Source: Macrostomum lignano (Eukaryota). Taken from it: DNA of 46,531 nt. A program made the translations under genes and the position numbers. Shown here piece by piece: positions 19,366 through 43,927 of this stretch (its first letter is position 1; each line of letters begins with the position of its first letter). Location: contig NIVC01004424.1 of assembly GCA_002269645.1 (NCBI GenBank), positions 1-46,531 on the forward strand. Reading direction: 5' to 3'. The notes beneath the pieces were generated by a model. That model did not search any database, was not told the origin of the DNA, and saw only the letters and a program-made list of their open reading frames with translations.

Positions 19366-20326
19366 CAAAACAACAACAACAACAACAACAAAATACGCGA
19401 CCCAGCATGCACAGTCACAGTTAGAGCAGGGCGCGTCAGATGGCGCGCCGCAGAGCCTGGGAGCGAACAAAGTCCGCTTCGTTGGCAGTGTCGGGCGCCC
19501 CAGCGTCGCACAGCAGGCAGTCCACGTATCGACGGGTTCGGGCCTGACCCCGCCTGAACGGGCCCTGCAAGGTGAGCAGCAGGACGTCCTGAACGGGTTG
19601 GGGGCAGTAGCCCTCGGCCCGGATCACGTGACCCGCCAGTTGAGGTCGCCGCCGGCGCAAAATGATGGACGGGCGCTGCAGCTTGGCCCGATCGTACAGG
19701 ACCTCGATCCCGACGCTCTCGTCAGCTCGAAAGGCCGCACGGAGCAGCCCTGAGTGCTCCGAGTCCAGCTGCCGCTCCAACGTAGCCGTCAGCGTCCACG
19801 TCTCGGCGTTGTATTAGCAGGACGGTTTCGACCACTGCCTGCCACAGCCGAGCCCTCTGGTGGTCGGGCAGCGCTTCGGACTGGAGGACGGCTGGGATCG
19901 AACGAAAGGCCGCCCAGGCAAGTCCTCTGCGCCGCCGGAGGTCCTCTTCCACGTGGGGCACCAGACCGCCGAGGTAGGTGAACCGCTGGCAGCGTGCGAG
20001 CCTGGTCGTCTGCCCGTCTGCGCCGCGGCACGTCAGGTCCGCTGGAATGTCGGCCGGCACAGTCAGCACCTCGGTCTTCAGCGTGTTGACGATCAGACCG
20101 ACGCTCGATGCCACCTCGACCAGCCTGTCGATCTGGCGCTGGGCGCCTTCAACGGACGAGGACAGGAGGGCGAGGTCGTCGGCGTAGCCAAGCACGCTTA
20201 GGCGCTTTTCGCCGTGGCGGTGACCGATGCGTCTGCGCAGCAGGAAGCCGTCATTAGCCGAGGGGAGTCCGAAGCACCCAGTCCAGAAGCAGCACGAAGA
20301 GGAACGGCGCTAGCGTGTTCTGTTCT
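19366..20326 (-). mobile_element. 5'-truncated RTE-like LINE (RT C-terminal half) with (TTG)n tail and 13-bp TSD
   Basis: TLAPFLFVLLLDWVL, LGYADDLALL, RFTYLG and LLYNAETWTL (with one frameshift near 19810). Tail caacaacaac at 19366-19390. TSD gaaattgctacaa at 19353-19365 and 20327-20339. Confidence 0.9.
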
Positions 20327-20653: not shown

Positions 20654-21231
20654 CTAACAAATGCCTCCAAGACTTAACGAAAGCTCATATTCCATGCCGC
20701 CGCCACTGTTCAAGTGCTTGCCCAGCTGCAGAGGATGGTTAATCTCAGTTATCTGTCGCGGCCACTCAGTCTTGACAATCCTGATGGAGCTGTCCGCAAT
20801 TACTCGTCGTGGCGGCAGCTCGTCGAACTCCATGGATCTCTCGCCAGCTTTGAGACAGTTAATCAAGCCGCCAAGTTCTTTGTCCGTCTGTATGTGACCT
20901 ATCCGTGTACCGTTGTCGATGATAAACATCAATTCGCCGATGTACAATTGGACAGTAGTGCGACTATACTCTGTAGCTGCGATGGTGACTTTATGAATAG
21001 TTAGCCACCACCATTCGATGTTGTCTGGGCACAGAAAGTCAGCAACTGCTACAGCTGGAAGTAATTGAAGACAGCCCAGCAACACCAGCAATGGACAGGA
21101 GCCGCACAATGCAAGCTGCACGATTTTAGTAGGCTGGAATGTTGTCACTGATATATAATATATTGCATTGGTCCATAAATATATTTGAATTCTACCCAAA
21201 AAATCAGCACCAAAAACGCTATACTTACCAT
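20654..21231 (-). CDS. Secreted-family member A, ~160 aa; exons 21231-21229 (ATG) and 21133-20654
   Basis: ATG|GTAAGT donor and attccag| acceptor, phase 0. Hydrophobic signal LLVLLGCLQLLPAVAVA, then CPDNIEWWW and C-terminal LGKH...MEYE...GGIC. TATA-like element upstream. Confidence 0.75.
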
Positions 21232-21280
21232 ACCAAAACGGCAAATGAGTGGCAATGAGAAACTTGCGTCTATGAAGCGA

Positions 21281-21293
21281 CTTTTATATATAT
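21281..21293 (-). promoter_or_regulatory. Probable TATA box of secreted gene A
   Basis: Minus-strand atatatataaaag about 50 nt upstream of the ATG at 21231. Confidence 0.5.
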
Positions 21294-21639
21294 CTACTGA
21301 TAAAGGTGGAGTGGTATACACTAGAGCGATGTCGAATTCATAAATAAAATTTGTCTAATCGATTGTCTATGGCTTTTGTACGAGTACATTGTATCGAATG
21401 TACTTGTCATATGTGCGTCTAGAAATATCAAGCAAACCTACGTTGACCACTAAAGTTCCACTAAAAGTGTTGTTGTAAAAATTTATCTCGAAAAAAATTT
21501 CTCTTGTTCTCTCTTCTTTCAAAGTCGTTTCGAAAGAAACAGAAAGCAAATATAATCAGTTTATGTTAGACTTCAACTTAGTTCGCAACACAGCTTATAA
21601 AACAAAAATTTAGAAGCAAAAAAGCAAAGTCTCGAAGGA

Positions 21640-23073
21640 CTAGGATTCCGTGTAAATGCGAAGAAGAAATTCCAATCGCTTGCCATTCAGCGGCGATTCA
21701 GTCTGTGGCACCACCGTGTAATCACCTGGCGGCAGGGACACGCGGAACACTACCGAGCGCTGGTTGTCTTCGGGGTGTTGAGCCACCTGGTACACGGGTC
21801 GCCTCAGACAGTTAGCCCCTTTATAGATGTCAACAGCTTTGACAGAGAATCGTCGCTTTTCTAGCGGAATGTTGCGCTGCCCCGGCTCTTCCAGACTGAT
21901 CACAACGGTGGCAACTCCGTCCTGATTGCTTCCATCGCAAAAATTTGTCAGGAACGTGTTGTCCTCGAAGAATTCGTCAATTTTTTGACCTGGATACCAC
22001 TCTCCGTAGATGTACTTGCCGTTCCACTCGGCTCCCGTCACGCCGTTGTCCAAATTTCTAGCCAAATGCAAAACTGTCAGGAACTCGAAGAACTTCATAA
22101 AGTCGGACAGCTCCATCCAGTTCTCACCGTCGTCCTGCTTCACTAATCCAGCTAGCTTCATCTGCTCGGGCGTCCACCTGGGATCATTGTCGTTCCATTT
22201 GCCGCGCCATTCAAATTCGCTTAGCGGCCCCCAGGGATTGCAAATCCGGATCAGATCCACCAGCTTGCCATTGTGTGGGATCTGCACTGTGCCTGTGACG
22301 ATGTATTCGTGACCGGACGTCAATCCGAGGCTCTCGAGGTTTTCGCCCAGAATTTCGGTGTGGGTAGCCGCACCAGCGGACAGTTTTTTTGATAGGCAAT
22401 ACTTAATGTTCTCCAGCACCTTTGCCCCGTCCTCCCGCTTGAATGGGATCAACTCGCACACTCCACCAGTGAGGTCGGCCATGGCCTCCAGCTCGAGCCC
22501 GCCAATTAGAGACTCATAGCATCCGTGCAGCTTAGCTAGCGCCTTCTCCAACAGGCAGACCCAGTACTCGCCCTCGTGCGCCGCGGCGTACACAAGCTGG
22601 CCGTCCTTGGTCGGCAGTCTATCGTCCACCATGATCTCCACTTCGCGTCCAAATGGTCGGAAGCGGAACCGGAAGGCGCCGCAGTAACCTGCACCGCTCA
22701 GTGTCTGGTCAGGAAGGATGACCTGGGACAGTAGGTCCGGTCTCTGCGTGATGGCAGCAACAGCAGCCAAGATCCAGCAGTTCTCCAGTTCGCCTTGATT
22801 TATATCAAATCGAGAGAAACCATCTTTGACGAACTCCGGGTCAGCGTCGAGTTCTTTAGGTCGCAGCCACTTGTAATTGAGCTTCTTGTGAGCATAAGTT
22901 AGAGAAGTGTCGTCGGCCGGAAATTCCGGATCTTCAAACAGCCTTTTGCTAGCTCGAAGCTCCCGGATTATCTCATTGTTCTTTTCAACGTTCAGAGTTA
23001 TAAAATTAGTCGTTGACACTCGAAATTGAGAGCAGCTTGCAGTAGAAGGTCTCCAAAACGCCTCTTGCTGCAT
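21640..23073 (-). CDS. Intronless atypical calpain (CysPc + domain III, no penta-EF-hand), predicted active; ~477 aa from ATG 23073
   Basis: FEDPEFPA, DINQGELENCWILAA (Cys), VDDRLPT, WVCLLEKALAKLHGCYESL, GHEY (His), ICNPWG (Asn), and a C-terminal EFLLRIYTES typical of the end of domain III. Confidence 0.9.
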   Translation of the reverse strand: MQQEAFWRPSTASCSQFRVSTTNFITLNVEKNNEIIRELRASKRLFEDPEFPADDTSLTYAHKKLNYKWLRPKELDADPEFVKDGFSRFDINQGELENCWILAAVAAITQRPDLLSQVILPDQTLSGAGYCGAFRFRFRPFGREVEIMVDDRLPTKDGQLVYAAAHEGEYWVCLLEKALAKLHGCYESLIGGLELEAMADLTGGVCELIPFKREDGAKVLENIKYCLSKKLSAGAATHTEILGENLESLGLTSGHEYIVTGTVQIPHNGKLVDLIRICNPWGPLSEFEWRGKWNDNDPRWTPEQMKLAGLVKQDDGENWMELSDFMKFFEFLTVLHLARNLDNGVTGAEWNGKYIYGEWYPGQKIDEFFEDNTFLTNFCDGSNQDGVATVVISLEEPGQRNIPLEKRRFSVKAVDIYKGANCLRRPVYQVAQHPEDNQRSVVFRVSLPPGDYTVVPQTESPLNGKRLEFLLRIYTES

Positions 23074-23661
23074 GACGTTTGCCAGCAAAACTACTAATAA
23101 AATCTGTACAAAGATTAGAAAAAGAGAAGATTATCTCTATTCTCTTTTGAATCAGGGCCGGGTCTTCTTGAACCCGAGTTCCAAGTTATTTGCACATTTA
23201 AATGGGTAAAAAATAGATTTTTCACTGGGAAACCGTATAGTCTATGGGAAAAGTCAATCAATTCTATGCAGTAGAACATACGTCTAAACCATTTTAAAAA
23301 TAGCAAAAAACACAAAATATGAACATAAAATAAACGCAGAGCAAATCAAGTTTAGATGGTGTGAATTGATCACATCCCAGATTAATGCGAGTATAGATTT
23401 ATTGATATTGCAGAATACACCAGGTACAATAGTACGACCTACATTGTATAATTGGCTACATTGTATAATTTACCAGCTACGAGTATATCTGTTACTGGAT
23501 AAATTAGCTCTAATGTTAAAGAGCAACTTTGTATTTTAACCTTTGCAATAACCTTTGCAATTCACAGACTGTGACAAAAACAAACGAAACCGATTTTGAT
23601 TCTACGAAGTTAGATTGAACGATTTAAACAAAAGGCGTGCATATAGTCGTGTATAAACAAT

Positions 23662-25855
23662 ATGTATTAGGACGCAAAGGGAAGGCCCCAAGCGCGCACG
23701 CGTTCGCAGAACAGCTAGGTGGGAGGGGCAGGCAGCAGCAGCCTAAGGGATCAGCTCAAGCGCCTGCAGGTCAGCGATGAGGCAGTCCTAAAGGCAGTGG
23801 CCCAGCAGCATCTGACGGCGACGGCGCAGGGTATCTCTCAGGGACTTCCAGCGCGGGCCATCAGAGCGTTGGTCGGCAGGCGCTCCGGGTCCAGGGCTGG
23901 CTTTCGCAACTCGGTCAACGGCACAGCCTCCATGCTGTACAGGAGGATCGGCTCGACGGCCGCGAGGAACAGGCGCACCTTCAGGTCGTCTCTGGCAGCT
24001 GAATTGAAGACGTTCCTGAGGAGGTGCGCGGCGCGCCATAGCCTGATTTCTTCTGTAGGAGACAATCGCATTGGGATTCATTACCAGGGCGCCGAGATAC
24101 CGCGGAAGTCCTCGCACACCTCGATGCGGTCTCCATTGGGCAGCTTAAGGGTTGGGACGGTATTCATGCCCACGTGCAGCGCCTCCGTCTTGTGAGCAAT
24201 TACCAGCAGCCCAACACGGGCGCCCTCGTCGCAGAGCCTTGTAAGAGCTCGCTGGGCAGCAGCTGGAACGCGGCAGAGCAGTGCGATACGCGAGAGAGGG
24301 AAGCGAAACAGCAGGGTGTCTGGAGCTTCGGCGTGGGCCCAGCAAGTAGCTGTCATCCTCGCGGAGGGACCGACGAAGCACGTAGTGCATAACCACGGGG
24401 AAGAGCAGAGTAGCCAGCGTGTCACCCTGAAGGACGCCTGGGCTGGTGCCGAATTCTTCTGTGGGGCCATCGCTCGACATGACAAAAGCCCTGGAGTCGT
24501 GGTAGAGGTCCCTCACCGCGCTCACCAGCGCAGCATGTACGCCATAATGAGATAGAAGCCACGCCTGGACACCGAGTCAAACGCCTTGCGATCTAAGCGC
24601 CATCTGAGCGCCTGGGACACGCCTCCTTTGCCGAAAAAGACAGGCGGCTTCACTTCATCTGCGTCTATGCTCCAACGGCTTCCCGGACCAGCGAAGATCC
24701 ATCCGTGACAGAAGCCCTTTACGACACTCTGGGCTGCATGCTTGATTCCATCCCTGCTCATGACGATCTATCATTGTTGCTGGTGACTTTAACTCGCTAT
24801 CCAGTTTTATCCAGGCCAGAGATCTGATGGCTGTCAATGGCACCATGCGACAGCGCTTCAGCAAGCTTCCAATTTTATTTGGCCCCAACGGGCGAACCAC
24901 TCGGCTGAACTGGATTTTCTGCCCAACTGCCCTGAGGGTGCGCAGAGTCCTCAACATCCGCCCCGACTGCGTTCAATCTGATCACCGCCTGATGGCCTGA
25001 TCTGCACTGGCAGAGACTCCCGCCTGCGCCACCTCACCCGCTCTGGGCCGACCTGAGAAACCCGGACACGCGGCAGGCCTTCCTACTGCTTACCACTACT
25101 CCTGCTCTAGCCCAGTCCTTCGAGTCTTTCCATCACGCCGTCGAGGATGCTGCAGCGCTTCTCCCACGGAGACAGGCAAACCCTCCAAAGGCCCTGTGGG
25201 ACCGCAATTGCATCATCTCCCAGGCAAGGCGGCATGTGCAGAGCACTGCTGCACTCCACGGCCGTGACAGCAACCAGGCCAGTGCTGCCAGGGACGAGCT
25301 GCAGTGCATCTACGCCCAGCGGACTGAAGCCTGCCTGCATCAAAGAAGCTGTGAGCGAAATCCAACTCGCCACTGACAACTGCCGCCATAGTGCTGCCTG
25401 GAGAGCCATCAACCAGCTGACTGGCAGGAAGCCCAGGCCTAACACCATCGTTGGCGCTGATTCCACCGAGAACCGCAAGGCCCTGCTGGCCACCCACTAC
25501 CGCGAGGTGCTCAACGCGCCCGCTCCAACTGCGCCTCTTCTGCCGATCCCAGCTCTACTTCGCTCCAGCTCAGCCAGGCCCTTCAACACCGGCCCCATCA
25601 CTGTAGGTGAAGTTGACCGAGCACTGAGGACCATGCGAGCTGATGCTGCCGCTGGGGTGGATGCCGTCCCTCCCAGGGTCCTGAAGCTGCCCGAGCTCAC
25701 TCCAATCTTCACCAACCTGCTGAACAAGCACTGCAGCCTTGGAGGCAACGAGGCCGCCTCCTGCCCAGCCTCAATCAGCTGCTGCTGAGCTTCCAAAGCG
25801 GCTTCTACCCGGACAGGTGGACAGATGAGCAATTCACAGTATTCCTTCATCCATG
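23662..25855. mobile_element. RTE-like LINE with 5' inversion: minus-strand RT 3' half (~23662-24591) plus inverted plus-strand APE/linker (~24592-25855)
   Basis: Minus strand: RKAFDSVSRR, GVLQGDTLATLLF, VEPILLYSME. Plus strand: SERL, FICVYAPT, IVAGDFNS, GPNGRTTRL, SDHRL, FNTGPITVGEV, QSGFYPDRWTDEQ. Many frameshifts. Confidence 0.85.
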
Positions 25856-26051
25856 ACCGTAGCTACGAGTATGTACATTTTTATTTTTAGTTTTTGTTTA
25901 ACACGCGAACTTCCATATAGTCTTTGATGTAAAGCCAGAATGCCAATGGGAAGCGAAACTTGTTAGTCTTAATTAACGAACCCAAAACTTGTGTTTAGAA
26001 TCAAGATCTTTCATTCCTCGACTTTGTCGTTTTTCGTTAAAAAGACCAATA

Positions 26052-26638
26052 ATGGTAAGCGCTTATTTGCTCCAGTGACTAAACTGTATTGATGCCTGTA
26101 TGTCTTCATTCATTGACGCAATCAGTTTCAATTTCAGGCTCAGCACAAGTTGCTGAAGAGATCAACAATATTTGCTCTCATCGTCATTCATCTATACTTG
26201 ATAATTACGCCATCAAACAAAGCCTTAGGCAGACGAAGAGATCAAGAAGAGTTGACCTACTGCAAAGGCAAAATGCGCTGGTGGGTCATAGTCAGACAGA
26301 GGGTGACACTGTTCGCTAGCAACTTCGGCGGCGCCAAAGCTTACGTGTATTTCAACAGGATTTTGCCTCCCAGTGGCTTACTACAATGGCACAGTTATGA
26401 AATGAGACGCCATGTTGCTCCAAATATGGGCGCAGATGTGGTGTTCCTGGATAAAAATCACTACATAGTGCCAGCTTATAGCTACTATCGACTGCGTCGA
26501 ATGGCCAGGCTTCGTAAAGGCTCATTCAACGAGATCAATGGTCACCTGCTGCTTGGTAGTCACGTTCACATGTACCACTACATGAGGTACGAATACACTA
26601 CCGTAGACGGTGGCAGCTGTGGCGACACATTCACTTAG
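26052..26638 (+). CDS. Secreted-family member B, ~167 aa; exons 26052-26054 (ATG) and 26138-26638
   Basis: ATG|GTAAGC donor and atttcag| acceptor, phase 0. Signal IFALIVIHLYLII, then CKGKMRWW and LGSH...MRYE...GGSC. AATAAA at 26810. Confidence 0.75.
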
Positions 26639-28012
26639 TTCTCTGGAGATTGAAGAGCTTAGACTAGCTTGTACTGTCTAAATTTCTTCTGGGAGTCTTT
26701 CTTGAGTGCGCTTTGAGTTATTCGCAAAAAATACATTTAGTATATGAAAATTCAAAACTTTCAATTTTATTAACTCATTTTTGAGTTTCGATTGTTAATT
26801 TTCATTTGAAATAAAACGGATCAGTTTGGAGACACTTCGATTTTGTAGCTACTAGTTGTGTCAGACTTTTGCTGATATTTGTAGAGATGCATTAAGTGTT
26901 ACATTTAGTACTTATAATCTTACAGTATTATAGAAAGAAGCTGTTTTCTTCCATAATCCTTTTAAAGATTTTAGTACATTAGGCCCCAATCTCTGCTAAG
27001 AAAAAATGCTATTGCTTTTGATAGGAGGCAGATCCAGTGTTCATCTTTTGATATGTTGTGCATTTCTTATTGCTCTATCGATATTCATAAAGCTTTTCGT
27101 TCAGAAATAGTTTTAAAGGCAGCTTTCAACGGAAAAATACACTACGGAGATAAGAAATTTCACGATTTTCAACACTAAAACAGAGATTGGGTCTCTTAAC
27201 AGTGTCAGAGAAAGTTCTAATCACACTATTTTGTGCCCCACATGCTGCTCTAACGACGCATTAATCGATTTTTCATGTTAAATTGGTCTGGTCATTATTT
27301 CAAATGTTTTTTAATTGATTTAGATTTAGAATTCCTTGGTTAACATGTTGCAGATTGTGCATTTTGTTCGAGAAAATCTTTTTTTTCTCACAAGGGAGTC
27401 AATTTTCTTACTGCCACATATTCTTACATGTACTGCTTCATTAAATTTGTGCAGGATCGAGGTCTGCGGTACCCTGACACAAAGCCTTCGGCGAATTCAT
27501 TCAACAATAGCACTGAAGAAATTTTTGCTCATTCCGCTGACTGCTGAGTAGACGATCACACGGTGTGTTCAGCGGCCCTGACCTTCTAATCGTCAGGAAT
27601 GTACACTATACTCTCTGTGGAGACTGGCCCTCATTGTTGTAAAATGCACGACAACCCCCAGGCGGATGTTGCCCTCCCCAGCATGAACACTTTAAATAAA
27701 TTATCTTCAGACACTCGTTAGATAAACAATGAAAAAGTAGCATATTTTTCGAGATTTTAAAATTAGAAACTTGCAAACTAGAATAAAGTACGGGTCTTTC
27801 GAAAAAATGCTGTGATGGTCAGAAGTTGTTGCAAGAAACTGAAATAATGTTATAGCAGTGAGAGCATTCAACTCAAACTATTTGTTTATGGCATTTCCCT
27901 ACAAGCAAGATGAAGCAATCGGTTGAAGTTATTTGCTTAGTTAGATCAAATCGGAAGTTTAAATATTAGGAGACTATTGTCGTCATAATTAATCTTAGTA
28001 GCTTTTAGAAAC

Positions 28013-28498
28013 ATGGCACTGCGATCAAGCAGTTTGCTGCGAGCATTGCTGCTGCTCAGTCAAACATTCAGTTTTGCTTGGCCCACTGACACCTCAGTCA
28101 GGCATTGCAGAACGAATTCGCACTGGTTGAGATTTAACCTCATCAGCCTGGAGCTTTGGCCCGATCCGGCATCAATCTCGGCGCCAAAGGCGAGCCTGAC
28201 CTATACAACATTATTCAAATGGAGCAGCCTTGACGACAAGACCTACCTGAAATTGGAACACCTCCCACTGCCAGATCCAGCCGAGATCAACGGAGTGTAC
28301 TATTTTAAGCTGAACCAACGACAATACAGATCGGTCAGAAGAAGTCTCGCCAACTTGACCGTCAGTTACAATTCGATGTCTGGGCAGGTGAATCGTTACC
28401 TGGAGTTCCCGATCGAAATCGGCAGTCAAAGATTTCAAAATTACTGGATTTCAATTATGTACTTTTCGGCATTTGGCGGTGTTTGTCCTCTCTGTTAA
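28013..28498 (+). CDS. Secreted-family member C, 161 aa
   Basis: Signal MALRSSSLLRALLLLSQTFSFA, then CRTNSHWL and C-terminal IGSQ...GGVCPLC with the same spacing as the other members. Confidence 0.75.
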   Translation: MALRSSSLLRALLLLSQTFSFAWPTDTSVRHCRTNSHWLRFNLISLELWPDPASISAPKASLTYTTLFKWSSLDDKTYLKLEHLPLPDPAEINGVYYFKLNQRQYRSVRRSLANLTVSYNSMSGQVNRYLEFPIEIGSQRFQNYWISIMYFSAFGGVCPLC

Positions 28499-28767
28499 TT
28501 TTTTTGGGTTAACGCGCTCCATCCCGAGTGCTACTTAAAGTATATGACTTCTTTGCTGCAATCTGTAAACATACAATCGTATAGTCAGATATATCAGATA
28601 TATGTTACAAGTCATTTCAACCCTCTGGGGGGCACCAAAAGAAATTCACAAAACGTTCATTAAATAAGCTGCCAAGTTCTGAAGAATTTCTAAATAACTT
28701 AATAGTAGATTAGCAATGTCCTCATAAAGTTTAGCCATTGTCTTATTTGTCTGAATGCTTGAAATAT

Positions 28768-28917
28768 TGTAGCGGGTCGCCATCACAAACCCGAAATATC
28801 ATAACTCCGAAAACCAAAATAGCGGTTTGCGTTGCTAACACTGCCGGAGTTATGATTTTTCGGGTTTATGATATTTGAGGTTTATGGTATTTCGGGTTTG
28901 TGATGGGCGTTGCTACA
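28768..28917. mobile_element. 150-bp hairpin MITE with TGT...ACA ends
   Basis: tgtagcgggtcgccatcacaaacccgaaata pairs with tatttcgggtttgtgatgggcgttgctaca. No clear TSD. Confidence 0.6.
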
Positions 28918-28997
28918 TGTAAATCGGTATTCGAAGTTGTGATTTTTCGGGTTTGTGATGCTCCCCATTGTTCTAGTTAAAAATCCATTTTCTGATG

Positions 28998-29573
28998 TCA
29001 TTTCTGTGGTCTATCGCTCGTGATGATGTGGTGCTTTGTGTCATGTTTAACTTTGGTGGCCGGAGGTAGCCGCCCTCCTTCGACGTACGTGAAGGTGCTG
29101 CGGTAACGATCGATGAGTGCGCGTACACGAGGATCGCAGTGGTCTGGATACGCCAGCGACACGGCGAGTTCATCGAGGTCCACTGCGGTAACCGGCAGAG
29201 ATGGCGTATGTAGTCTCGTTGTAGGGTCAACTAGTCGACGCCCCTTGCAGTCGACGATCAATTCGAAATGACTGAGGAAGTCGTACCCCAGGATAGGTTG
29301 CACGACGGATGCGACCAGGAACGTCCAGCGGAATTCACGACGGAGTCCTCGGATGTTGACGTCGAGCGAGATCTCTCCAGCGACCGGTATCGATGCACCG
29401 GTGGCGGTGGTCAGGCGAAATCCGGTCTCCTGAAGGTCCCGGTGGAATTGCTTCTGCGGAATTATCGACACTGCTGCGCCGGTATCGAGCAGGAACGGGT
29501 AGTACTTGCTGTCTATCTTGATATCCACCACCAGGAATTTCTTGCTCGCCGCCGGGGATGATGCACTGCTCAC
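28998..29573 (-). CDS. Gypsy aspartic protease and start of pol (truncated)
   Basis: FLLDTGAAVSII, ILGYDFLSHF, IVDCKGRRL and HHIIT. Confidence 0.85.
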   Translation of the reverse strand: MSSASSPAASKKFLVVDIKIDSKYYPFLLDTGAAVSIIPQKQFHRDLQETGFRLTTATGASIPVAGEISLDVNIRGLRREFRWTFLVASVVQPILGYDFLSHFELIVDCKGRRLVDPTTRLHTPSLPVTAVDLDELAVSLAYPDHCDPRVRALIDRYRSTFTYVEGGRLPPATKVKHDTKHHIITSDRPQK

Positions 29574-29596
29574 TGCGGCAGGTTGGGCAGTGCCCT

Positions 29597-30496
29597 CTAG
29601 TTTGACGGCTGACGTGTCGGAGAGGCTGACCTGGACTGTGCAGGTGTCTTTTCGTGAGTACTCAGAATTCGCGGCCGCCTACCACCCAAGGCGGACGGGA
29701 AACGACACCACGGTCGGCAGGTAAGCGCGCGTTCACCGTAGTAGATGTGGGCCCGGCAGACGACCGGACGCTGTCCTGGCTTGAACGGGGTGACGCTTGT
29801 CTGTGGCTGCAGTTGTCGGCGTGGCGGTTCGTCCCGTCTGGAGTTGATAGTCGGCGGTGGCGTCGGCTGTACAGCGCTGACTGAGCTCGCCGAGCTCTGG
29901 TAGCTGACCATGAAATCAGCGATTTCAGCGAGCTTATCTGGCGATTCCTGCTGGAAGCCTGATAGTGCGACTCGTAGCTCACTGGGCAGGCAGCGGATGA
30001 GAGTCGCCTTGAGCATGTCGGAGCAGGAGCCCATGCCGCACTGAGCCATCTTGGCGCTGAGCTTCTTGACGAAGATTGAGGGCTTGTCGCCACCTAGATC
30101 GGACGTGGCCAGGATCTCGTTGATCTTCTCCTGCTGACTCTTCTGCAGAAGGTTGGAGATGGCGGCTTTAAGCGGCTCGTACTGTCGAGGCGTTGATGTC
30201 GTGATCAGCATCGACGAGATATCCTCCGGCAGGTGCGCAACCAAGTAGTGGTACTTGGTCTCGTCCGAAGTTATGCGCGCTAGGTGGAATTGCGACTCTA
30301 GGGTCCGGAACCAAGCTTCCGAATTGTTCCGGTACAGCGGCGGAACCTTAACGGACACGGCGGACACGCTTGGCTCAAGTATCGGTGGTGTATGTTGAAC
30401 AGGTAGCTGCCCAGTGGGGTTGAGCACCGGGGCCTGGTTGTTGTCGGCGGCTGCTGCGGCCTGCTGCGATAGCTGCGGATCGCTTTCGTCGGCCAT
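29597..30496 (-). CDS. Gypsy gag
   Basis: VKVPPLYRNNSEAWFRTLESQF, LGGDKPS, LPSELRVAL and C-terminal CRAHIYYGERALTCRPWC, typical of Gypsy gag. Confidence 0.85.
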   Translation of the reverse strand: MADESDPQLSQQAAAAADNNQAPVLNPTGQLPVQHTPPILEPSVSAVSVKVPPLYRNNSEAWFRTLESQFHLARITSDETKYHYLVAHLPEDISSMLITTSTPRQYEPLKAAISNLLQKSQQEKINEILATSDLGGDKPSIFVKKLSAKMAQCGMGSCSDMLKATLIRCLPSELRVALSGFQQESPDKLAEIADFMVSYQSSASSVSAVQPTPPPTINSRRDEPPRRQLQPQTSVTPFKPGQRPVVCRAHIYYGERALTCRPWCRFPSALGGRRPRILSTHEKTPAQSRSASPTRQPSN

Positions 30497-30515
30497 GACG
30501 ACTCACCGGACCAGT

Positions 30516-30906
30516 TGTAGCGACTGTAAAATGAAAAAGGTAGAGCTAGGCGGTGGTTCGCCCTTGTTTGCTTCTTTGTTTGGCACTTGAGTTTCTCGAA
30601 TATCCAAAGAGGCTTGGAGCAGATGCTGGTTTAGCTACTGTATATTTATACTTAATTGACCTTCCGGAAATTTCTAGAATCATTTTAGTGCGGTAAAACA
30701 AACTGTATAGTAAGTATCGTACGTACGGTATTCATATTTTGTATGATGATGAATTACAGTAAATAAATATTTATTGAGTAGAAATATTTACTACGAGATT
30801 AGAAATAGCTAGATAAAGAATATTCTAGAATTTAACTGGTACTGTATTGCAGAAATTTCGGGAAGTAAACATCATACGGTATAGAACTTTCGCGAAGGTC
30901 ACTACA
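30516..30906 (-). repeat. Gypsy 5' LTR (391 bp)
   Basis: Ends tgtagcgac (30516) and gtcactaca (30906), adjacent to the PBS. Confidence 0.75.
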
Positions 30907-31092
30907 GTTACACAGTCAATAAGCAATATTAAGTGAATATCATTAATAACTTTAAACATTTAACTATACCTTTACCAGTTTTGTGATGCCGTATGCAGTT
31001 AAGCGCTGCGTTACCCTTAGGTTAGCAATAAAGGTTTAGTACAATAGCAGAATCTTCAACAGATAAACAAGACAACAGCACTATAACAAAAG

Positions 31093-31421
31093 TTCACCAA
31101 CACTTTAGTTCCCCAGCACTTTAGTTCCCCAGCACTTTAGTTCCCCAGCACTTTAGTTCCCCAGCACTTTAGTTCACCAGCACTTTAGTTCACCAGCACT
31201 TAGTTCCCCAGCACTTTAGTTCACCAGCACTTTAGTTCACCAGCACTTTAGTTCACCAGCACTTTAGTTCACCAGCACTTTAGTTCACCAGCACTTTAGT
31301 TCACCAGCACTTTAGTTCACCAGCACTTTAGTTCACCAGCACTTTAGTTCACCAGCGCTTTAGTTCTCCAGCACTTTAGTTCACCAGCACTTTAGTTCAC
31401 CAGCGCTTTAGTTTTCCAGCA
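31093..31421. repeat. 16-bp minisatellite accagcactttagttc, about 20 copies
   Basis: Direct tandem repetition. Confidence 0.95.
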
Positions 31422-31597
31422 CCGATAAACTGAACTGGCTTTGTTGAAATTAAGTTCGACATTTCCCTACTTTACTGGAAAACCCATACTTAACGTGTCA
31501 AAAGCAAGTAGTGCAAGGAGCAGTGCAAGTCCCAATGCAAATCCAGAGTGAAAAAAAAACACTTTTGCCAGCATTTCCACCGGTAGATATTCAACAT

Positions 31598-31837
31598 TTA
31601 TCCGCGCTTTTTGAGATATTGAGCAACACATGAGGATCTGACATGGAGTAGTTCGTATCCAGATTTTAGGAAAATCAATGTCTTTGAACCATGAGCTCTA
31701 TAGCATTGGACACTCAGATAAAAAGTATCTGGACTTTTTACCATTACGCCATATACTCGTAATGGAGCATTGGGGTGGCAAAGTGCCAAAATGACAAAGA
31801 AAAAGTCGAAAGCTACCGTCAATAAAATAGTTTTCAT
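31598..31837 (-). CDS. Possible 79-aa signal-peptide ORF of unknown function
   Basis: Hydrophobic N-terminus MKTILLTVAFDFFFVILALC, starting 32 nt after the stop of member D. No family motif. Confidence 0.25.
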   Translation of the reverse strand: MKTILLTVAFDFFFVILALCHPNAPLRVYGVMVKSPDTFYLSVQCYRAHGSKTLIFLKSGYELLHVRSSCVAQYLKKRG

Positions 31838-31869
31838 TCAAACAGTTAGTTATTTACCAGTTAGCGCAG

Positions 31870-32574
31870 TTATTTCAAGCAGATTGGACACAAGCCACCT
31901 TTTCTTGTATGGTATGTGTAGGACATATTCTTAATGCTTACAGTGTGATAACCAAGAAATATCTTCACTTTCATTCTGACCACTTGACCGGACCAATCAA
32001 TCAGCGAGATTCGCGCGTAACTGTCCGCCAGAACAAAGAAAATATTTTTCTTGCCGTTCATAAAAGTCCAACCATTGAAAGAGCGCTTTTGTTCCAGACG
32101 CATTCGCTGCTTGGTGTAGCGCACCAACGTCAGTGTGGAGTGCCTGTCGTCGTTCTGATTTGAAACTTCATAAAACTCCACGTAAGCTGCATCCGTATAG
32201 GAAATTTTGGATTTAACGTAGAGAACATGCGCAACGAGCATCCAGTATTCGGTACCATCCTCACAGATCTCGTGCCCCAGAACATAACTAGCCGGCAGCA
32301 AGATGGACTGAGATACAATGATTGCCACCAGTATACGGAGTATTGTGATCATGGGCGACGACATCTGAGTGGATTGGTAAAACAATGGGTGGCTTATTGC
32401 CTATGCGCGTGAAGCTTTGAGGTAATATCAGGCTATTTTAGTACATCGGCATGCGTTTATTGTCGAGTTTCAGGCTTATGGTAGACTATGGCATGTTGTT
32501 GAATCGTTAATACTTGTTAGACTTTGTTCTGAATTTCTATTATTCTGCAACAGACAGAAGAGAAAACTTACCAT
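31870..32574 (-). CDS. Secreted-family member D, ~165-177 aa; exons 32574-32572 (ATG) and 32364 (or 32400)-31870
   Basis: ATG|GTAAGT donor with two in-frame acceptors. Signal ITILRILVAIIVSQSILL, then CEDGTEYW and FLGYH...MSY...GGLCPIC. Confidence 0.75.
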
Positions 32575-32877
32575 CGCAAACAGCGGCACTGACCCTGGGT
32601 GTGTCTAAAAAGCCTAAGCATTGCTGATTCCTTAGCGTTGGTTTCTTTTAGAAGTTTACCCATAGAACATGTAACTTCAGCGCGTTTTTCCAATCTACTC
32701 TAATCTGCTACATGGCAGGTGATTCCTTTAAATTTCAATCAAAAGTCTAATTTAAATTATAATTGAAAATGAAACTATAATTTAACAAAAGGCGAAAACT
32801 TTATTTGGTAAATGAAGGAACAACTGAGGGAACGTAAAAGCAAGTTGAAATTCAATCCTTGCTAACAATACCAAGGA

Positions 32878-34263
32878 TCACGTGAACACTCGAAGCAAAA
32901 ACTCCACCCTGTTGCCTTCAATCAGGGTCTCAATGCGAGGAATGACAACATAATCGCCAGGTCGCAGACTTGCTCTTGAAACAAATTGTCTTTCCAACTC
33001 CGTTCCCGTGAATCGCATCAAAGGTTCGCCTTCGGGCAACTTGCCCGGATAAATTTCAATGATTTTCTTGGCGAATTCCGAGCCATCAGGGTACAGATGG
33101 CGTCGTTCACCCTCTTCCAAACTGATAATGACGTACGCCGACCCATCCGGATTTGCTGACGCACCGGAAACGGTAAAGCTGAAGCGGTCGTCATGATAGA
33201 ACTCATCCGGACCCTGGTTCATCGTCCACGCTCCGTAGACCTTCTTGCCAGTCCACTCTGACCCGGTCACGCCGCAGTCTAAATTTCTGGCCAAATGAAG
33301 AATTTGAACGGACTCAAACATTGGCACGAAATCAGAAAACTCAATTGTAGTTTCACCTTCTGTAGCATTGGCTTGCAACTGGTACCAGTCGGATGACAAG
33401 CGGGTATATTCTTGATCTAGCAAAGCTCTTCTATAATCCAAAATCTTCACAACATCGATTGAACTGCCGTCCCGTGGAACCTGAGCAGTGCCGCTAATAA
33501 TATAATGGCCTCCTGGCGGCAGGTTGGGCAATTTTTTCATGCATTTTTCAGCGTCATCGCTGCTTTCATTGCGTGCACAGAACGCTTCAACGATCAGTTC
33601 CCGTTTTAAAGCTGACTGCAATATTTTCAGTAAATCGTCCACCTTGATTTCTCTTACATAGATCTCTTCGCAAACTCCACCAGTGAGTAGTGGCAATAGC
33701 TCTAACGATGCGCAAGTTGGTACATCTTCGTATGAGCCGAACAGCTTAGCAAAAGCCTTCTCGAGTAGGCACAGCCAGAACTGGCCACGGTGAGTTCCGG
33801 AAAACGCTAGTTCCCCGTTTATAGTAGGGAGCCGATCGTCAATAGTGAGCTCAAATTCTTGGCCAAATTGGCGAAAGATGAAGCGAACAGAACCGTCATA
33901 GTTCTTGCCGTGCAGTGTCTGACCCGGTGGAATAACGCTGTGTAAGAGGTCCTGCCGATTTCCGATTCGGGCTAGACATAGTAATAAGCAATAGTTGGCA
34001 CTTTGACCTCTGACGTTCGCGTTGAATCCCGACCCGACGTTAACGTCTCCGACCTCGAACAGTAGTGCTGTGCCATTTCCGGTCATTTCGTGCGGCCTTA
34101 GCCAGACTAAAGGTTTAGAATGGTATCTTCCTGATGTCGAATGGGCCTGATGCTCATCATCCTGTCCAGCATGTACAGAACTGTAATCGGCTGGAAATTC
34201 CGGATCTTTAAGCGGCTTTTCTCCGGGTTTCAGCTTTTTAAACGCTTTGAAAAGTCTCTTCAT
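32878..34263 (-). CDS. Intronless calpain-like protein, predicted catalytically inactive (461 aa)
   Basis: LKDPEFPA, IDDRLPT, WLCLLEKAFAKLFGSYE and EFLLRVFT are colinear with calpain A. Triad positions read RGQSANYC (C->Y), GGHY (H->G) and LDYR (N->D). Confidence 0.88.
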   Translation of the reverse strand: MKRLFKAFKKLKPGEKPLKDPEFPADYSSVHAGQDDEHQAHSTSGRYHSKPLVWLRPHEMTGNGTALLFEVGDVNVGSGFNANVRGQSANYCLLLCLARIGNRQDLLHSVIPPGQTLHGKNYDGSVRFIFRQFGQEFELTIDDRLPTINGELAFSGTHRGQFWLCLLEKAFAKLFGSYEDVPTCASLELLPLLTGGVCEEIYVREIKVDDLLKILQSALKRELIVEAFCARNESSDDAEKCMKKLPNLPPGGHYIISGTAQVPRDGSSIDVVKILDYRRALLDQEYTRLSSDWYQLQANATEGETTIEFSDFVPMFESVQILHLARNLDCGVTGSEWTGKKVYGAWTMNQGPDEFYHDDRFSFTVSGASANPDGSAYVIISLEEGERRHLYPDGSEFAKKIIEIYPGKLPEGEPLMRFTGTELERQFVSRASLRPGDYVVIPRIETLIEGNRVEFLLRVFT

Positions 34264-35270: not shown

Positions 35271-36579
35271 GTCTTCACCAGGGCCAGGCTCACTCAACTC
35301 GGGCCAAACCTGGTTTTCCCTGACGTTTGCGGGTTCGAGAGCATACCGCTGCTCGCCCGGTACCTCAGGGACACGGGACGAGCTGAGTTCTTCTCCACCG
35401 CCGGTGAGGAGGACCGCGCGGCAGGTGAAATCGACGGGTCCCCCTGAGAGACATCACTTTGATGGAAAACATTGGTCGCCAGTGGCCAGCGAAATGGGCG
35501 GCGCGCCTCCTCCGCCTAGCGTTGCCCCCTGCAGCTGAGTCAACTCTATTGACGAGTAGATCGACCCATTGACAATAGAATAGAATTGTACACAATCACC
35601 CGGGAGAACAGCTAAACTGACAATTTATCCCAGAATAGCGTCAAAAGAGAAAACGCAGAATGCGGTCTGTTTTCCGAAATTTGCGCATCATACAGCGCAT
35701 ACAGCGTCCCCGTTTTATCTGTTGCTTTAGCTATTAAAAGCATCGCAGTTTGTAATGCAACAACTGTGTAAAAATACCTACCTTGTACCTAGTTGCATTG
35801 GTATAAAATGAATAATGAAAAGTTAATGAATAATAATAGCCTAATCGATTCGTTTTGGCCGAAAAATAAGCTTCTTTAAGCTTCGTTGCTTCTCTCTGAC
35901 CGCTCGCCCTGTGACTGTATTGTTTTGCTAACTTTCTAACGACGGCAAACCCAAAACAGAAATTATATGCGCAAATCTAAAAAGCAGGCATTCCGTCACG
36001 CTAGACGCCTCGGGTAGCTGCAACACCCACTGAGTTTGTTTATTTCTTCTCAGCAAATTTTGTGGTTTTTGCGAGTCAAAAACGAACAAAAAAGTTTTAA
36101 AGACATTTAATTTAAGCTACTCGACAAGCACTTTGATTTGCGATACTCGCCAAGTTGGAGGTTCCTTGCGATCTTTTCAGCAGCCAAGTTTACAGAAAGT
36201 TTAAACCGCATGCATAAGGAGAGTAATCTTTGCTGCAAGTGAAAGCGACGTGAACTTTTAGCCATTTGTGCTGTTGCGTGCAAGGTGAAGGTGTTAAATT
36301 ACAACCTTAAACAGGTATGCGTTGTACGAGACTGCAAAAATTTCGAGTGTATTTTGTATTCAGGATTCAAATTGTCGTGGGAGCGAATGCAGGTTTAAAT
36401 TTGCAATGATTTTGCAAGAACAGAAAGGATGAGAGCGCAAAGTTATTTCCAAACTGGTTCGGTCTTAGCTTAGAGCTACATGTAGGTCGCAACTCTGTCT
36501 AACAAAAATGAAATATTCTGTCTGAAATACCAGTACTATCTAACAGGTGTCTACCATTCTGCCTAGCCGGTGTGTGAGG

Positions 36580-38228
36580 GATTATCTTGTCTAACAGATG
36601 TGTGACACTATCCTGTCTAACAGATGTGTGACACTATCCTGTCTAACAGGTGTGTGACACTATCCTGTCTAACAGATGTGTGACACTGTCCTGTCTAACA
36701 GGTGTGTGACACTGTCCTGTCTAACAGGTGTGTGACACTGTCCTGTCTAACAGGTGTGTGACACTATCCTGTCTAACAGGTGTGTGACACTATCCTGTCT
36801 AACAGGTGTGTGACACTATCCTGTCTAACAGGTGTGTGACACTATCCTGTCTAACAGGTGTGTGACACTATCCTGTCTAACAGGTGTGTGACACTATCCT
36901 GTCTAACAGGTGTGTGACACTGTCCTGTCTAACAGGTGTGTGACACTATCCTGTCTAACAGGTGTGTGACACTATCCTGTCTAACAGGTGTGTGACACTA
37001 TCCTGTCTAACAGGTGTGTGACACTGTCCTGTCTAACAGGTGTGTGACACTATCCTGTCTAACAGGTGTGTGACACTATCCTGTCTAACAGGTGTGTGAC
37101 ACTATCCTGTCTAACAGGTGTGTGACACTATCCTGTCTAACAGGTGTGTGACACTATCCTGTCTAACAGGTGTGTGACACTATCCTGTCTAACAGGTGTG
37201 TGACACTATCCTGTCTAACAGGTGTGTGACACTATCCTGTCTAACAGGTGTGTGACACTGTCCTGTCTAACAGGTGTGTGACACTATCCTGTCTAACAGG
37301 TGTGTGACACTATCCTGTCTAACAGGTGTGTGACACTATCCTGTCTAACAGGTGTGTGACACTATCCTGTCTAACAGGTGTGTGACACTATCCTGTCTAA
37401 CAGGTGTGTGACACTGTCCTGTCTAACAGGTGTGTGACACTATCCTGTCTAACAGGTGTGTGACACTGTCCTGTCTAACAGGTGTGTGACACTATCCTGT
37501 CTAACAGGTGTGTGACACTATCCTGTCTAACAGGTGTGTGACACTGTCCTGTCTAACAGATGTGTGACACTATCCTGTCTAACAGGTGTGTGACACTATC
37601 CTGTCTAACAGGTGTGTGACACTGTCCTGTCTAACAGGTGTGTGACACTATCCTGTCTAACAGGTGTGTGACACTATCCTGTCTAACAGGTGTGTGACAC
37701 TATCCTGTCTAACAGGTGTGTGACACTATCCTGTCTAACAGGTGTGTGACACTATCCTGTCTAACAGGTGTGTGACACTATCCTGTCTAACAGGTGTGTG
37801 ACACTATCCTGTCTAACAGGTGTGTGACACTGTCCTGTCTAACAGGTGTGTGACACTATCCTGTCTAACAGGTGTGTGACACTATCCTGTCTAACAGATG
37901 TGTGACACTATCCTGTCTAACAGGTGTGTGACACTATCCTGTCTAACAGGTGTGTGACACTATCCTGTCTAACAGGTGTGTGACACTATCCTGTCTAACA
38001 GGTGTGTGACACTATCCTGTCTAACAGGTGTGTGACACTATCCTGTCTAACAGGTGTGTGACACTATCCTGTCTAACAGGTGTGTGACACTGTCCTGTCT
38101 AACAAGTGTGTGACACTATCCTGTCTAACAGGTGTGTGACACTATCCTGTCTAACAAGTGTGTGACACTATCCTGTCTAACAGGTGTGTGACACTGTCCT
38201 GTCTAACAAGTGTGTGACACTATCCTGT
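36580..38228. repeat. 26-bp satellite ctaacaggtgtgtgacactatcctgt, about 63 highly homogeneous copies
   Basis: Direct tandem repetition. Variants are cacta/cactg and cagg/caga/caag. Confidence 0.97.
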
Positions 38229-43573: not shown

Positions 43574-43659
<86 letters not shown>

Positions 43660-43660
43660 A

Positions 43661-43747
<87 letters not shown>

Positions 43748-43756
43748 GTGTCTGTG

Positions 43757-43839
<83 letters not shown>

Positions 43840-43864
43840 GTGTCTGTCTGTCTGTCTGTCTGTC

Positions 43865-43927
<63 letters not shown>

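What the first reader, a model, noticed from the sequence alone, without database searches (positions are those of the whole stretch)
20654..34263. Duplicated two-gene cassette: calpain followed by a secreted-family gene
Active calpain A (stop 21640) lies 409 nt upstream of the ATG of gene A (21231). Dead calpain B (stop 32878) lies 304 nt upstream of the ATG of gene D (32574). All four are on the minus strand. The proteins are deeply diverged, so the linkage is old and retained. Inference: a co-regulated or operon-like protease/partner module, with an active and a pseudo-enzyme version flanking two further family genes.
Basis: partly seen in the sequence, partly recalled or inferred. Interest (0 to 1): 0.75.

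Follow-up and report, generated by a model that had tools for sequence, protein, structure and literature searches.

The report
Flatworm calpain plus small-secreted-gene cluster
In a Macrostomum lignano (flatworm) contig, two short calpain genes, one active and one catalytically dead, are each followed by a member of a tiny orphan family of secreted beta-sandwich proteins; this looks like an ordinary lineage-specific duplicated gene cluster, and nothing found here shows an operon or a protease-partner system.

Summary
The window is the whole contig NIVC01004424.1 of Macrostomum lignano.

- **Calpain A** (21640-23073, minus strand) keeps the Cys/His/Asn catalytic triad.
- **Calpain B** (32878-34263, minus strand) has Tyr/Gly/Asp at those positions.
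- **Spacing:** each calpain lies 409 or 304 nt upstream of a same-strand small gene, gene A or gene D.
- **The family:** genes A, D and two plus-strand genes (B, C) form a real but very diverged orphan family of 160-167 aa. Shared features are a hydrophobic N-terminus, one Cys near each end of the mature protein, and a C-terminal GGxC motif. In A, B and D the first coding exon is only the ATG.
- **Fold:** AlphaFold models give an all-beta sandwich. Its best, weak structural matches are C2 domains.

Duplication of a two-gene segment is the simplest history. However, the arrangement alone has P = 0.10 by chance, the small-gene tree is unresolved, and another calpain (P0002) is closer to A than B is.

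Nothing found supports an operon or a partner module. The calpains have no signal peptide while the small proteins do. The small genes carry their own 5' exon and cis donor. An AATAAA lies between calpain B and gene D. Sister contigs carry a 2-kb transposon between calpain A and gene A. Genes B and C have no upstream calpain, and a third calpain locus has no family gene. Transcript data are needed to settle it.

The parts
21640..23073 (-). Calpain A, a single-exon CDS of 477 aa. It has a CysPc protease core plus a C2-like domain III, no PEF/EF-hand domain and no signal peptide. The catalytic Cys/His/Asn are intact.
   Evidence: Pfam hits; alignment; identical to database protein P0001. There are 12 synonymous and 0 nonsynonymous differences from the copy on contig NIVC01002721.1.
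21232..21639 (-). Spacer between calpain A and gene A, 408 nt. It has no canonical AATAAA or ATTAAA. A TATATAA motif lies at 21290. The empty site of a 2-kb TIR transposon present in the sister contigs lies at 21497|21496.
20654..21231 (-). Gene A, 160 aa. Exon 1 codes only the ATG (21231-21229), followed by a 95-nt intron (21228-21134) and exon 2 (21133-20654). It has a hydrophobic N-terminus and ends in GGIC.
   Evidence: NCBI protein P0122 (97% identical sister copy) has the same M|PTKIV junction.
26052..26638 (+). Gene B, 167 aa. Exon 1 codes only the ATG (26052-26054), followed by an 83-nt intron and exon 2 (26138-26638). No calpain lies upstream of it.
   Evidence: Matches P0121.
28013..28498 (+). 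Gene C, 161 aa, single coding exon. It is the most diverged family member and ends in GGVCPLC.
28998..30496 (-). Retroelement fragment (gag-like DUF7041 plus retroviral aspartyl protease ORFs) lying between gene C and gene D.
   Evidence: Pfam.
31870..32574 (-). Gene D, 165 aa as inferred. ATG at 32574-32572, then GTAAGT, a 207-nt intron and exon 2 (32364-31870), which itself begins with ATG. No gene is called here in the public annotation of either contig. A 98.8%-identical intact copy lies on the sister contig.
   Evidence: AlphaFold model pLDDT 81.9.
32575..32877 (-). Spacer between calpain B and gene D, 303 nt, with a canonical AATAAA at 32805-32800, 73 nt after the calpain B stop.
32878..34263 (-). 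Calpain B, an uninterrupted 461-codon ORF with a CysPc-like core plus domain III. The catalytic Cys, His and Asn are replaced by Tyr, Gly and Asp. The public annotation calls only a 304-aa product (33279-34263) using a 70-nt intron.
   Evidence: The ORF is intact in the sister contig, with 5 synonymous and 5 nonsynonymous codon differences.
23719..25850 (.). GC-rich stretch of overlapping broken ORFs between calpain A and gene B. It looks like decayed repeat or retroelement sequence, but no Pfam family reached its threshold.
   Evidence: ORF list; Pfam found only a sub-threshold DUF7158 match.

Best explanation
This is a lineage-specific gene cluster in Macrostomum lignano built by local duplication. 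An ancestral segment carried a short, PEF-less calpain followed about 0.3-0.4 kb downstream by a small secreted-protein gene. That segment was most likely duplicated in tandem, giving calpain A + gene A and calpain B + gene D. Two more copies of the small gene (B, C) arose in inverted orientation between the pairs.

After duplication, calpain A stayed an active cytosolic protease under strong purifying selection. Calpain B lost all three catalytic residues but kept its fold and open reading frame, so it is a pseudo-protease. The small genes diverged very fast, as orphan secreted proteins usually do.

Each small gene is inferred to be an independent transcription unit. It has a 5' exon that contributes only the AUG, a short phase-0 intron, and then an exon encoding a signal peptide and a roughly 135-aa beta-sandwich, possibly closed by an N-to-C-terminal disulfide (inferred only from the two conserved Cys).

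The calpain-to-small-gene adjacency is therefore inherited from the duplication. It is not maintained by a functional coupling.

- **Shown:** the gene content, catalytic status, gene structures, family membership, and selection on calpain A.
- **Inferred:** the order of duplications, independent transcription, secretion, and the disulfide.
For: - **Identity and origin.** The window is contig NIVC01004424.1 of GCA_002269645.1. The nearest calpains are M. lignano paralogs. The four M. lignano calpains form a 99% bootstrap clade.
- **Same layout twice.** Order, strand and spacing (409 and 304 nt) match, and both calpains are intronless.
- **Small genes are one family.** This rests on the profile hit to P0124 at 9.7e-11, BLASTP A-D at 2.5e-7, the shared ATG|GTAAG first exon in A, B and D, the conserved N- and C-terminal Cys and the GGxC end.
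- **Selection.** Calpain A shows 12 synonymous and 0 nonsynonymous differences between copies. The calpain B ORF is intact in two copies. The small genes show mixed ratios: 8/5, 3/3, 2/2 and 2/2.
- **Different compartments.** N-terminal hydropathy is 1.45-3.08 for the family against 0.31 and -0.52 for the calpains. The AlphaFold model shows an N-terminal helix, then a disordered linker, then a beta domain.
- **Independence of the small genes.**
  - They have their own cis donor upstream of the first acceptor.
  - AATAAA lies after calpain B.
  - The annotated CDS of gene A on this contig is 5'-partial and starts at 21288, about 350 nt after the calpain stop.
  - Genes B and C have no upstream calpain.
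  - The sister copies tolerate a TIR transposon inside the spacer.
Against: - Co-duplication is not proven. The small-gene tree has no resolved node.
- P0002 is closer to calpain A than calpain B is, so at least one further calpain duplication occurred.
- The arrangement has P = 0.10 under random placement.
- Two of the three published M. lignano operon criteria are met: same orientation, and repeat-adjusted distance under 1 kb (PMC8629364).
- The exon-2 acceptors of genes A and B fit the trans-splice motif [T/C]TNCAG.
- The flatworm SL ends in AUG. SL trans-splicing onto exon 2 would therefore encode the same protein, so an operon cannot be excluded from sequence alone.
- No expression data could be retrieved.
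Confidence: 0.6

Rival explanations
1. The two pairs are true SL-resolved bicistronic operons. The calpain promoter drives a pre-mRNA that includes the small gene. The downstream cistron is released by SL trans-splicing onto the exon-2 acceptor, and the SL's terminal AUG supplies the initiator Met that exon 1 otherwise supplies.
For: - The pairs are in the same orientation with spacers of 304-409 nt, below the 1-kb operon threshold used for M. lignano.
- The SL ends in ATG with donor GTAAG.
- Flatworm SL AUGs can act as initiators, and cis and trans acceptors are widely shared.
- The acceptors of gene A (TTCCAG) and gene B (TTTCAG) fit the trans-splice motif.
- No canonical poly(A) signal lies between calpain A and gene A.
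Against: - A strong cis donor (ATG|GTAAGT) lies upstream of the acceptor in both A and D, which favours cis-splicing.
- AATAAA follows calpain B.
- The gene D acceptor (ACTCAG) does not fit the motif.
- Gene D has no gene call although calpain B has one.
- Gene B has the same ATG-only exon structure without any upstream calpain.
- The 2-kb transposon sits in the spacer in the sister copies.
- The modal intercistronic distance in M. lignano operons is about 100 bp.
Confidence: 0.13
2. The adjacencies are coincidental. Calpains and small genes were duplicated independently within a duplication-prone, repeat-rich region and ended up next to each other twice.
For: - Random placement gives the pattern with P = 0.10.
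- The small-gene tree does not pair A with D.
- The calpain tree does not make A and B sisters.
- The region holds retroelement fragments and tandem repeats.
- There is no non-coding similarity between the cassettes.
Against: - Order, strand and spacing are the same, and both calpains are intronless.
- A-D is the best within-locus BLASTP pair and the only one aligned over almost its full length.
- One segmental duplication needs fewer events than independent ones.
Confidence: 0.2
3. The pairs form a functional protease/partner module. The C2-like small protein would be a substrate, regulator or membrane-targeting partner of the adjacent calpain, with the dead calpain B + gene D acting as a regulatory or decoy version.
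For: - The linkage is retained across deep divergence.
- Models of two family members retrieve C2 domains as best structural matches, and calpains themselves use C2-like domains.
- The dead calpain keeps an open frame.
Against: - Predicted compartments differ: the small proteins are secreted and the calpains cytosolic.
- There is no sequence relationship between the family and calpain domain III (hhalign probability 0.1%).
- C2 similarity is weak: TM 0.31-0.49 normalised to the query (0.48 at most normalised to a stand-alone C2 target), best E 7.8e-4 and 8.9e-3.
- Two family members have no calpain neighbour, and one related calpain has no family neighbour.
- The pairing occurs at only one locus.
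Confidence: 0.05

Closest known systems
Non-classical (PEF-less) calpains and catalytically dead calpain homologues such as mammalian CAPN6 and Drosophila CalpC (from general knowledge of the family)
   Same: Both proteins have a CysPc core followed by a C2-like domain III. Calpain B has substitutions at the catalytic residues while the fold-defining motifs and the ORF are kept.
   Different: The proteins are only 461-477 aa, with no EF-hand, C2(T) or other C-terminal module. They are intronless. They belong to an M. lignano-specific clade whose nearest outside relatives are classical calpain A/B types.
[quoted passage not shown]
   Same: Neighbouring genes on the same strand with a spacer below 1 kb. 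The exon-2 acceptors of genes A and B fit the trans-splice motif.
   Different: The downstream genes carry their own 5' exon and cis donor. The spacers are 3-4 times the modal operon spacing. AATAAA follows calpain B. SL usage is unknown here.
C2 domains, including extracellular ones such as the perforin C2 (PDB 4y1s) and the Jagged-1 N-terminal C2 (PDB 4cbz)
   Same: The predicted fold is an all-beta sandwich of similar size. C2 domains lead the Foldseek hit lists for two independently modelled paralogs.
   Different: No Pfam or PDB sequence match. TM-scores stay below 0.5 and E-values are marginal. No conserved acidic calcium-binding cluster stands out among the invariant columns, which are Cys, Gly, Ser, Gly, Gly and Cys.
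Flatworm SL 3'-terminal AUG used as an initiator (Cheng et al. 2006, as cited in PMC12582326)
   Same: In genes A, B and D the first coding exon supplies only AUG and is followed by GTAAG, the same junction as in the SL RNA.
   Different: The exon-1 sequences show no significant similarity to the SL beyond ATG|GTAAG (shuffle p = 0.29-0.95). They are ordinary cis exons, and no SL gene lies in the window.

Membership tests
Calpain (Peptidase C2, CysPc) | Significant match to the calpain catalytic domain profile | tested here: met
   PF00648 matches calpain A at 6.6e-87 and calpain B at 2.5e-38, both over nearly the full profile.
Calpain (Peptidase C2, CysPc) | Catalytic triad Cys-His-Asn present (active enzyme) | tested here: met
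   Calpain A has Cys in ENCWIL, His in SGHEY and Asn in CNPWG. This row is for calpain A only.
Catalytically dead calpain (pseudo-protease) | Catalytic residues substituted while the calpain fold and ORF are kept | tested here: met
   Calpain B has Cys>Tyr, His>Gly and Asn>Asp. It is a 461-codon open frame with a domain III match and is intact in the sister contig.
Catalytically dead calpain (pseudo-protease) | Purifying selection on the protein, as opposed to a decaying pseudogene | tested here: inconclusive
   There are 5 synonymous and 5 nonsynonymous codon differences between two copies, too few to separate relaxed constraint from neutrality. Long-term ORF retention at 40% identity to A argues for constraint.
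Classical calpain | C-terminal penta-EF-hand domain | tested here: not met
   No EF-hand Pfam hit in either protein; both end right after domain III. Outside relatives carry EF-hand domains.
M. lignano SL operon (PMC8629364 criteria) | Adjacent genes, same orientation, repeat-adjusted distance under 1 kb | tested here: met
   Spacers of 409 and 304 nt on the same strand. The sister-copy spacer is about 2.4 kb only because of a 2.0-kb TIR element.
M. lignano SL operon (PMC8629364 criteria) | Downstream gene is SL trans-spliced | not testable with these tools
   No RNA data were available. Gene identifiers were not found in the searchable papers or supplements.
M. lignano SL operon (PMC8629364 criteria) | First acceptor of the downstream gene is not preceded by a cis donor (outron configuration) | tested here: not met
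   ATG|GTAAGT donors lie 95 and 207 nt upstream of the first acceptors of genes A and D.
C2 domain | Sequence-profile match to C2 | tested here: not met
   No Pfam hit at E <= 0.1. The profile search of PDB sequences found nothing relevant.
C2 domain | Eight-stranded beta-sandwich superimposable on known C2 domains | tested here: inconclusive
   The models have pLDDT 74.5 and 81.9. C2 domains top both Foldseek lists, but with TM 0.31-0.49 and best E-values of 7.8e-4 and 8.9e-3.
Orphan secreted family (genes A-D, P0124) | Mutual homology of the four window genes | tested here: met
   BLASTP A-D 2.5e-7, A-B 4e-4, D-C 3e-4. The profile recovers an outside member at 9.7e-11. A, B and D share the intron position.
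Orphan secreted family (genes A-D, P0124) | Cleavable signal peptide / secretion | tested here: inconclusive
   There is a hydrophobic N-terminal stretch in all five members, and the model shows an N-terminal helix and disordered linker before the domain. No dedicated signal-peptide predictor or experiment was available.

The most novel reading that the evidence does not exclude
Genes A, B and D could be 'dual-entry' genes. Exon 1 contributes nothing but AUG and is followed by the same GTAAG donor as the SL RNA. The same protein could then be made in two ways: from the gene's own promoter by cis-splicing, or from read-through transcripts of an upstream gene by SL trans-splicing onto exon 2, with the SL's terminal AUG taking the place of exon 1's. 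For genes A and D that upstream gene would be the adjacent calpain, which would make the calpain pairs facultative operons. It would also describe a mechanism by which flatworm genes move in and out of operons without changing their coding sequence.
Probability: 0.1. Interest if true: 0.6.

Novelty: new member of a known kind. Interest (0 to 1): 0.25.

Why it matters
If the ordinary reading holds, the locus is a tidy example of how a lineage-specific cluster forms. A segment duplicates, one enzyme copy becomes a pseudo-enzyme, and the linked secreted genes diverge until they are almost unrecognisable.

It adds three things to the Macrostomum annotation:
- a gene with no gene call in the public annotation (gene D);
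- a corrected full-length model for the dead calpain;
- a small orphan family with a predicted C2-like beta-sandwich fold.

It would matter more only if transcript data showed that the ATG-only first exons are interchangeable with the AUG-ending spliced leader, because that would give a concrete mechanism for facultative operon membership in flatworms.

Tried and rejected
- **Small gene derived from calpain domain III, or a split CAPN5/TRA-3-like calpain-C2 gene.** Rejected. hhalign of the family against a domain III alignment gave probability 0.1%. The nearest outside calpains are classical A/B types. Every family member, including the calpain-free genes B and C, starts with a hydrophobic signal-like segment.
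- **Exon 1 derived from an SL RNA gene.** Rejected. There is no significant similarity to the 35-nt SL beyond ATG|GTAAG, and no SL copy in the window at up to 3 mismatches.
- **More family members or calpain relics in the window or fetched loci.** None found. An HMM search of six-frame ORFs found only the four genes and their sister copies. tblastn found only the two calpains.
- **Wider homologs.** Two word-indexed searches and one exhaustive HMMER search gave only the M. lignano copies plus one 153-aa protein from a 1.7-kb Logan contig of run SRR29421764, whose organism I could not identify. The two other profile hits, P0125 and P0126, are repetitive proteins with 9-10 short matched stretches and were discarded.
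- **Expression or annotation evidence.** The gene identifiers and 'calpain' were absent from the main text of the searchable library and from the supplements of three M. lignano papers.
- **TATA-like motif at 21290 as evidence of a separate promoter for gene A.** Not used. The annotated 5'-partial CDS on this contig already starts at 21288, which overlaps the motif.
- **Gene trees as a test of co-duplication.** The calpain tree is informative. The small-gene tree is saturated.
Full report
**Where the window comes from.** Calpain A is identical to database protein P0001. An exact look-up places P0001 on NIVC01004424.1, a 46,531-bp contig of assembly GCA_002269645.1 (Macrostomum lignano), so the window is that whole contig. 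The same locus is present on at least two more contigs: NIVC01001642.1 (71 kb) and NIVC01002721.1 (146.5 kb). These are collinear with the window at about 94-98% identity across the calpain/small-gene region. That fits the duplicated large chromosome described for the sequenced DV1 line (PMC8629364).

**Checking the observation.** Both long minus-strand ORFs are calpains.
- Calpain A matches Peptidase_C2 at 6.6e-87 and calpain B at 2.5e-38. Each also has a domain III match.
- They are 40% identical.
- A keeps the catalytic Cys, His and Asn. B has Tyr, Gly and Asp at the aligned positions.
- Neither has EF-hands or a hydrophobic N-terminus.

At 21231 and at 32574 the ATG is followed at once by GTAAGT. 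Splicing to the next good acceptor (21133 for A, 32364 for D) continues the frame into a hydrophobic leader and a roughly 135-aa domain. Plus-strand gene B has the same structure: ATG at 26052, GTAAGC, an 83-nt intron. NCBI proteins P0122 and P0121 confirm the junctions for A and B. Gene C is a single exon. The stated distances of 409 and 304 nt are right.

**Are the four small genes a family?** Pairwise identity is low (about 16-35%, depending on pair and aligned length), but several lines agree.
- BLASTP gives A-D 2.5e-7 over nearly the full length, A-B 4e-4, D-C 3e-4 and D-B 3e-3.
- A profile of the four, scored against 1.84 billion representative proteins, recovers only the locus copies plus one outside protein. 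That protein is P0124, 153 aa, E = 9.7e-11, from a 1.7-kb Logan contig of run SRR29421764.
- P0124 shares the CPxxxEWW, LQLGxH and YEYTT motifs and the terminal Cys.
- All members have a hydrophobic N-terminal stretch.
- Each has one Cys shortly after that stretch and one in a C-terminal GGxC motif.

No Pfam, PDB-sequence or further database relatives exist. The family is real, tiny and orphan.

**What the small proteins look like.** AlphaFold2 on the shallow alignments gave usable models.
- Gene B: pLDDT 74.5, pTM 0.63. The model has an N-terminal helix, a disordered linker, then about ten strands.
- Mature gene D: pLDDT 81.9, pTM 0.75, all-beta.

Foldseek against the PDB put C2 domains at the top for both models. 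These included a perforin-type C2 (3w56/3w57) and the C2 domains of PLC, Nedd4, cPLA2 and PI3K-C2. The matches are marginal, with best E-values of 7.8e-4 and 8.9e-3 and TM-scores below 0.5. I therefore describe the fold as a C2-like beta-sandwich and treat it as tentative. A profile-profile comparison with calpain domain III, which is itself C2-like, found nothing. There is no evidence that the small genes derive from the calpains.

**Was a two-gene cassette duplicated?** The two pairs share order, strand and spacing, and both calpains lack introns. One segmental duplication is the most economical history. The tests that could prove it are weak, however.
- Random placement of two calpains and four family genes in a six-gene cluster gives this pattern with P = 0.10.
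- The small-gene tree has no node above 41% bootstrap.
- In the calpain tree the four M. lignano proteins form a 99% clade. P0002 pairs with A at 99.5%. B is sister to that pair at 84.5%, on a long branch.
- That topology is compatible with an early A/B split followed by a dispersed copy, but it does not require it.
- DNA similarity between the two cassettes is limited to collinear stretches inside the calpain coding sequence.

**Is it an operon or a co-functioning module?** Published criteria for M. lignano operons are: same-strand neighbours, a repeat-adjusted distance below 1 kb (mode about 100 bp), and an SL trans-spliced downstream gene. The first two are met. The third cannot be tested here. 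The sequence evidence leans against an operon.
- Both downstream genes have a consensus cis donor upstream of their first acceptor. This configuration is expected to give cis-splicing rather than SL trans-splicing.
- AATAAA lies 73 nt after the calpain B stop.
- The gene D acceptor (ACTCAG) does not fit the trans-splice motif.
- Gene D has no gene call on either contig, while calpain B does.
- Gene B has the identical ATG-only exon structure with no calpain upstream of it.
- In the two sister contigs a 2.0-kb element with 200-nt terminal inverted repeats (96% complementary) sits in the calpain A-gene A spacer, at window position 21497|21496.

Linkage is also not general.
- A third M. lignano calpain of the same clade (P0003, contig NIVC01000528.1) has no family gene within 10 kb.
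- The outside family member has no calpain in the 978 nt upstream of it.
- The calpains are predicted to be cytosolic and the small proteins secreted. This makes a direct protease-partner relationship unlikely.

**Selection.** Between contig copies:

| Gene | Synonymous | Nonsynonymous |
|---|---|---|
| Calpain A | 12 | 0 |
| Calpain B (codons) | 5 | 5 |
| Gene A | 8 | 5 |
| Gene B | 3 | 3 |
| Gene C | 2 | 2 |
| Gene D | 2 | 2 |

Calpain A is under strong purifying selection. Calpain B keeps an intact frame in both copies. Its counts, and those of the small genes, are small, but they are consistent with relaxed constraint in the dead calpain and the secreted genes. That calpain B keeps a 461-codon open frame and the fold motifs at 40% identity to A argues that it is a pseudo-enzyme and not a pseudogene.

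**One speculative point worth keeping.** The M. lignano spliced leader ends in ATG and its donor is GTAAG. Flatworm SL AUGs can serve as initiators, and cis and trans acceptors are often shared. Exon 1 of genes A, B and D supplies only AUG. SL trans-splicing onto exon 2 would therefore encode exactly the same protein. The exon-1 sequences are not SL-derived. Still, this structure would allow a gene to be expressed either alone or as a downstream cistron. I rate this at about 10% and flag it for transcript-level testing.

**Verdict.** The 'duplicated cassette' is a reasonable but unproven history. The 'operon-like protease/partner module' is not supported by anything I could test. This is a new instance of known kinds of things: a tandemly expanded lineage-specific cluster, a dead calpain, and an orphan secreted family.

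Noticed in passing
window 21496-21497; L001 11574-13580: Insertion polymorphism. Sister contigs NIVC01001642.1 and NIVC01002721.1 carry a 2.0-kb element with 200-nt terminal inverted repeats (96% complementary) and no long ORF, probably a non-autonomous DNA transposon. The window has the empty site.
   Followed up: partly
window 33279-34263: The public annotation gives calpain B a 304-aa product using a 70-nt intron; two GT..AG candidates fit, at 33480-33411 and 33356-33287. That model truncates the protein before domain III. The unspliced 461-codon ORF aligns with calpain A to its end.
   Followed up: partly
window 31870-32574: Gene D has no gene call on this contig or on the 71-kb sister contig, although its ORF is intact in both copies (98.8% identical). 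It is either an annotation gap or a sign of low expression.
   Followed up: partly
window 21229-21231, 26052-26054, 32572-32574: Three of the four family genes have a first coding exon that consists only of ATG, followed by GTAAG. This is the same junction as in the M. lignano SL RNA, whose leader ends in ATG.
   Followed up: partly
window 17230-17970 (+): An intact 246-aa ORF in an AT-rich stretch has a sub-threshold match to the ParB N-terminal domain (E = 4.3e-4, 20.7 bits against a cutoff of 26.3). Its identity is unknown.
   Followed up: no
window 6699-7877 and 10621-11463 (+): Two GC-rich ORF regions encode clearly related proteins of unknown function with no Pfam hit. Shared motifs include VVMATHKC..CG, LQVASPVESEFAV and RISLGGDECGF. 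This is a second local duplication in the contig.
   Followed up: no
window 15581-16734; 36539-38244; 31091-31422; 8215-8647; 43574-43927: Large tandem arrays: 22-nt unit x 52.6 copies, 26-nt unit x 65.6, 16-nt unit x 20.8 (lying between the retroelement fragment and gene D), 31-nt unit x 13.8, and (CTGT) x 89.5. The 22-nt array creates long spurious ORFs on both strands.
   Followed up: no
L006 979-1440 (Logan contig SRR29421764_182325): This is the only family member found outside M. lignano: 153 aa, with no intron after the ATG. It is closer to genes A and B than those genes are to D or C. The source organism was not identified.
   Followed up: partly
window 19722-20195 (-), 28998-30496 (-): Retroelement debris flanks and interrupts the cluster: a reverse-transcriptase fragment just beyond gene A, and a gag-like DUF7041 plus aspartyl-protease fragment between genes C and D.
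   Followed up: partly
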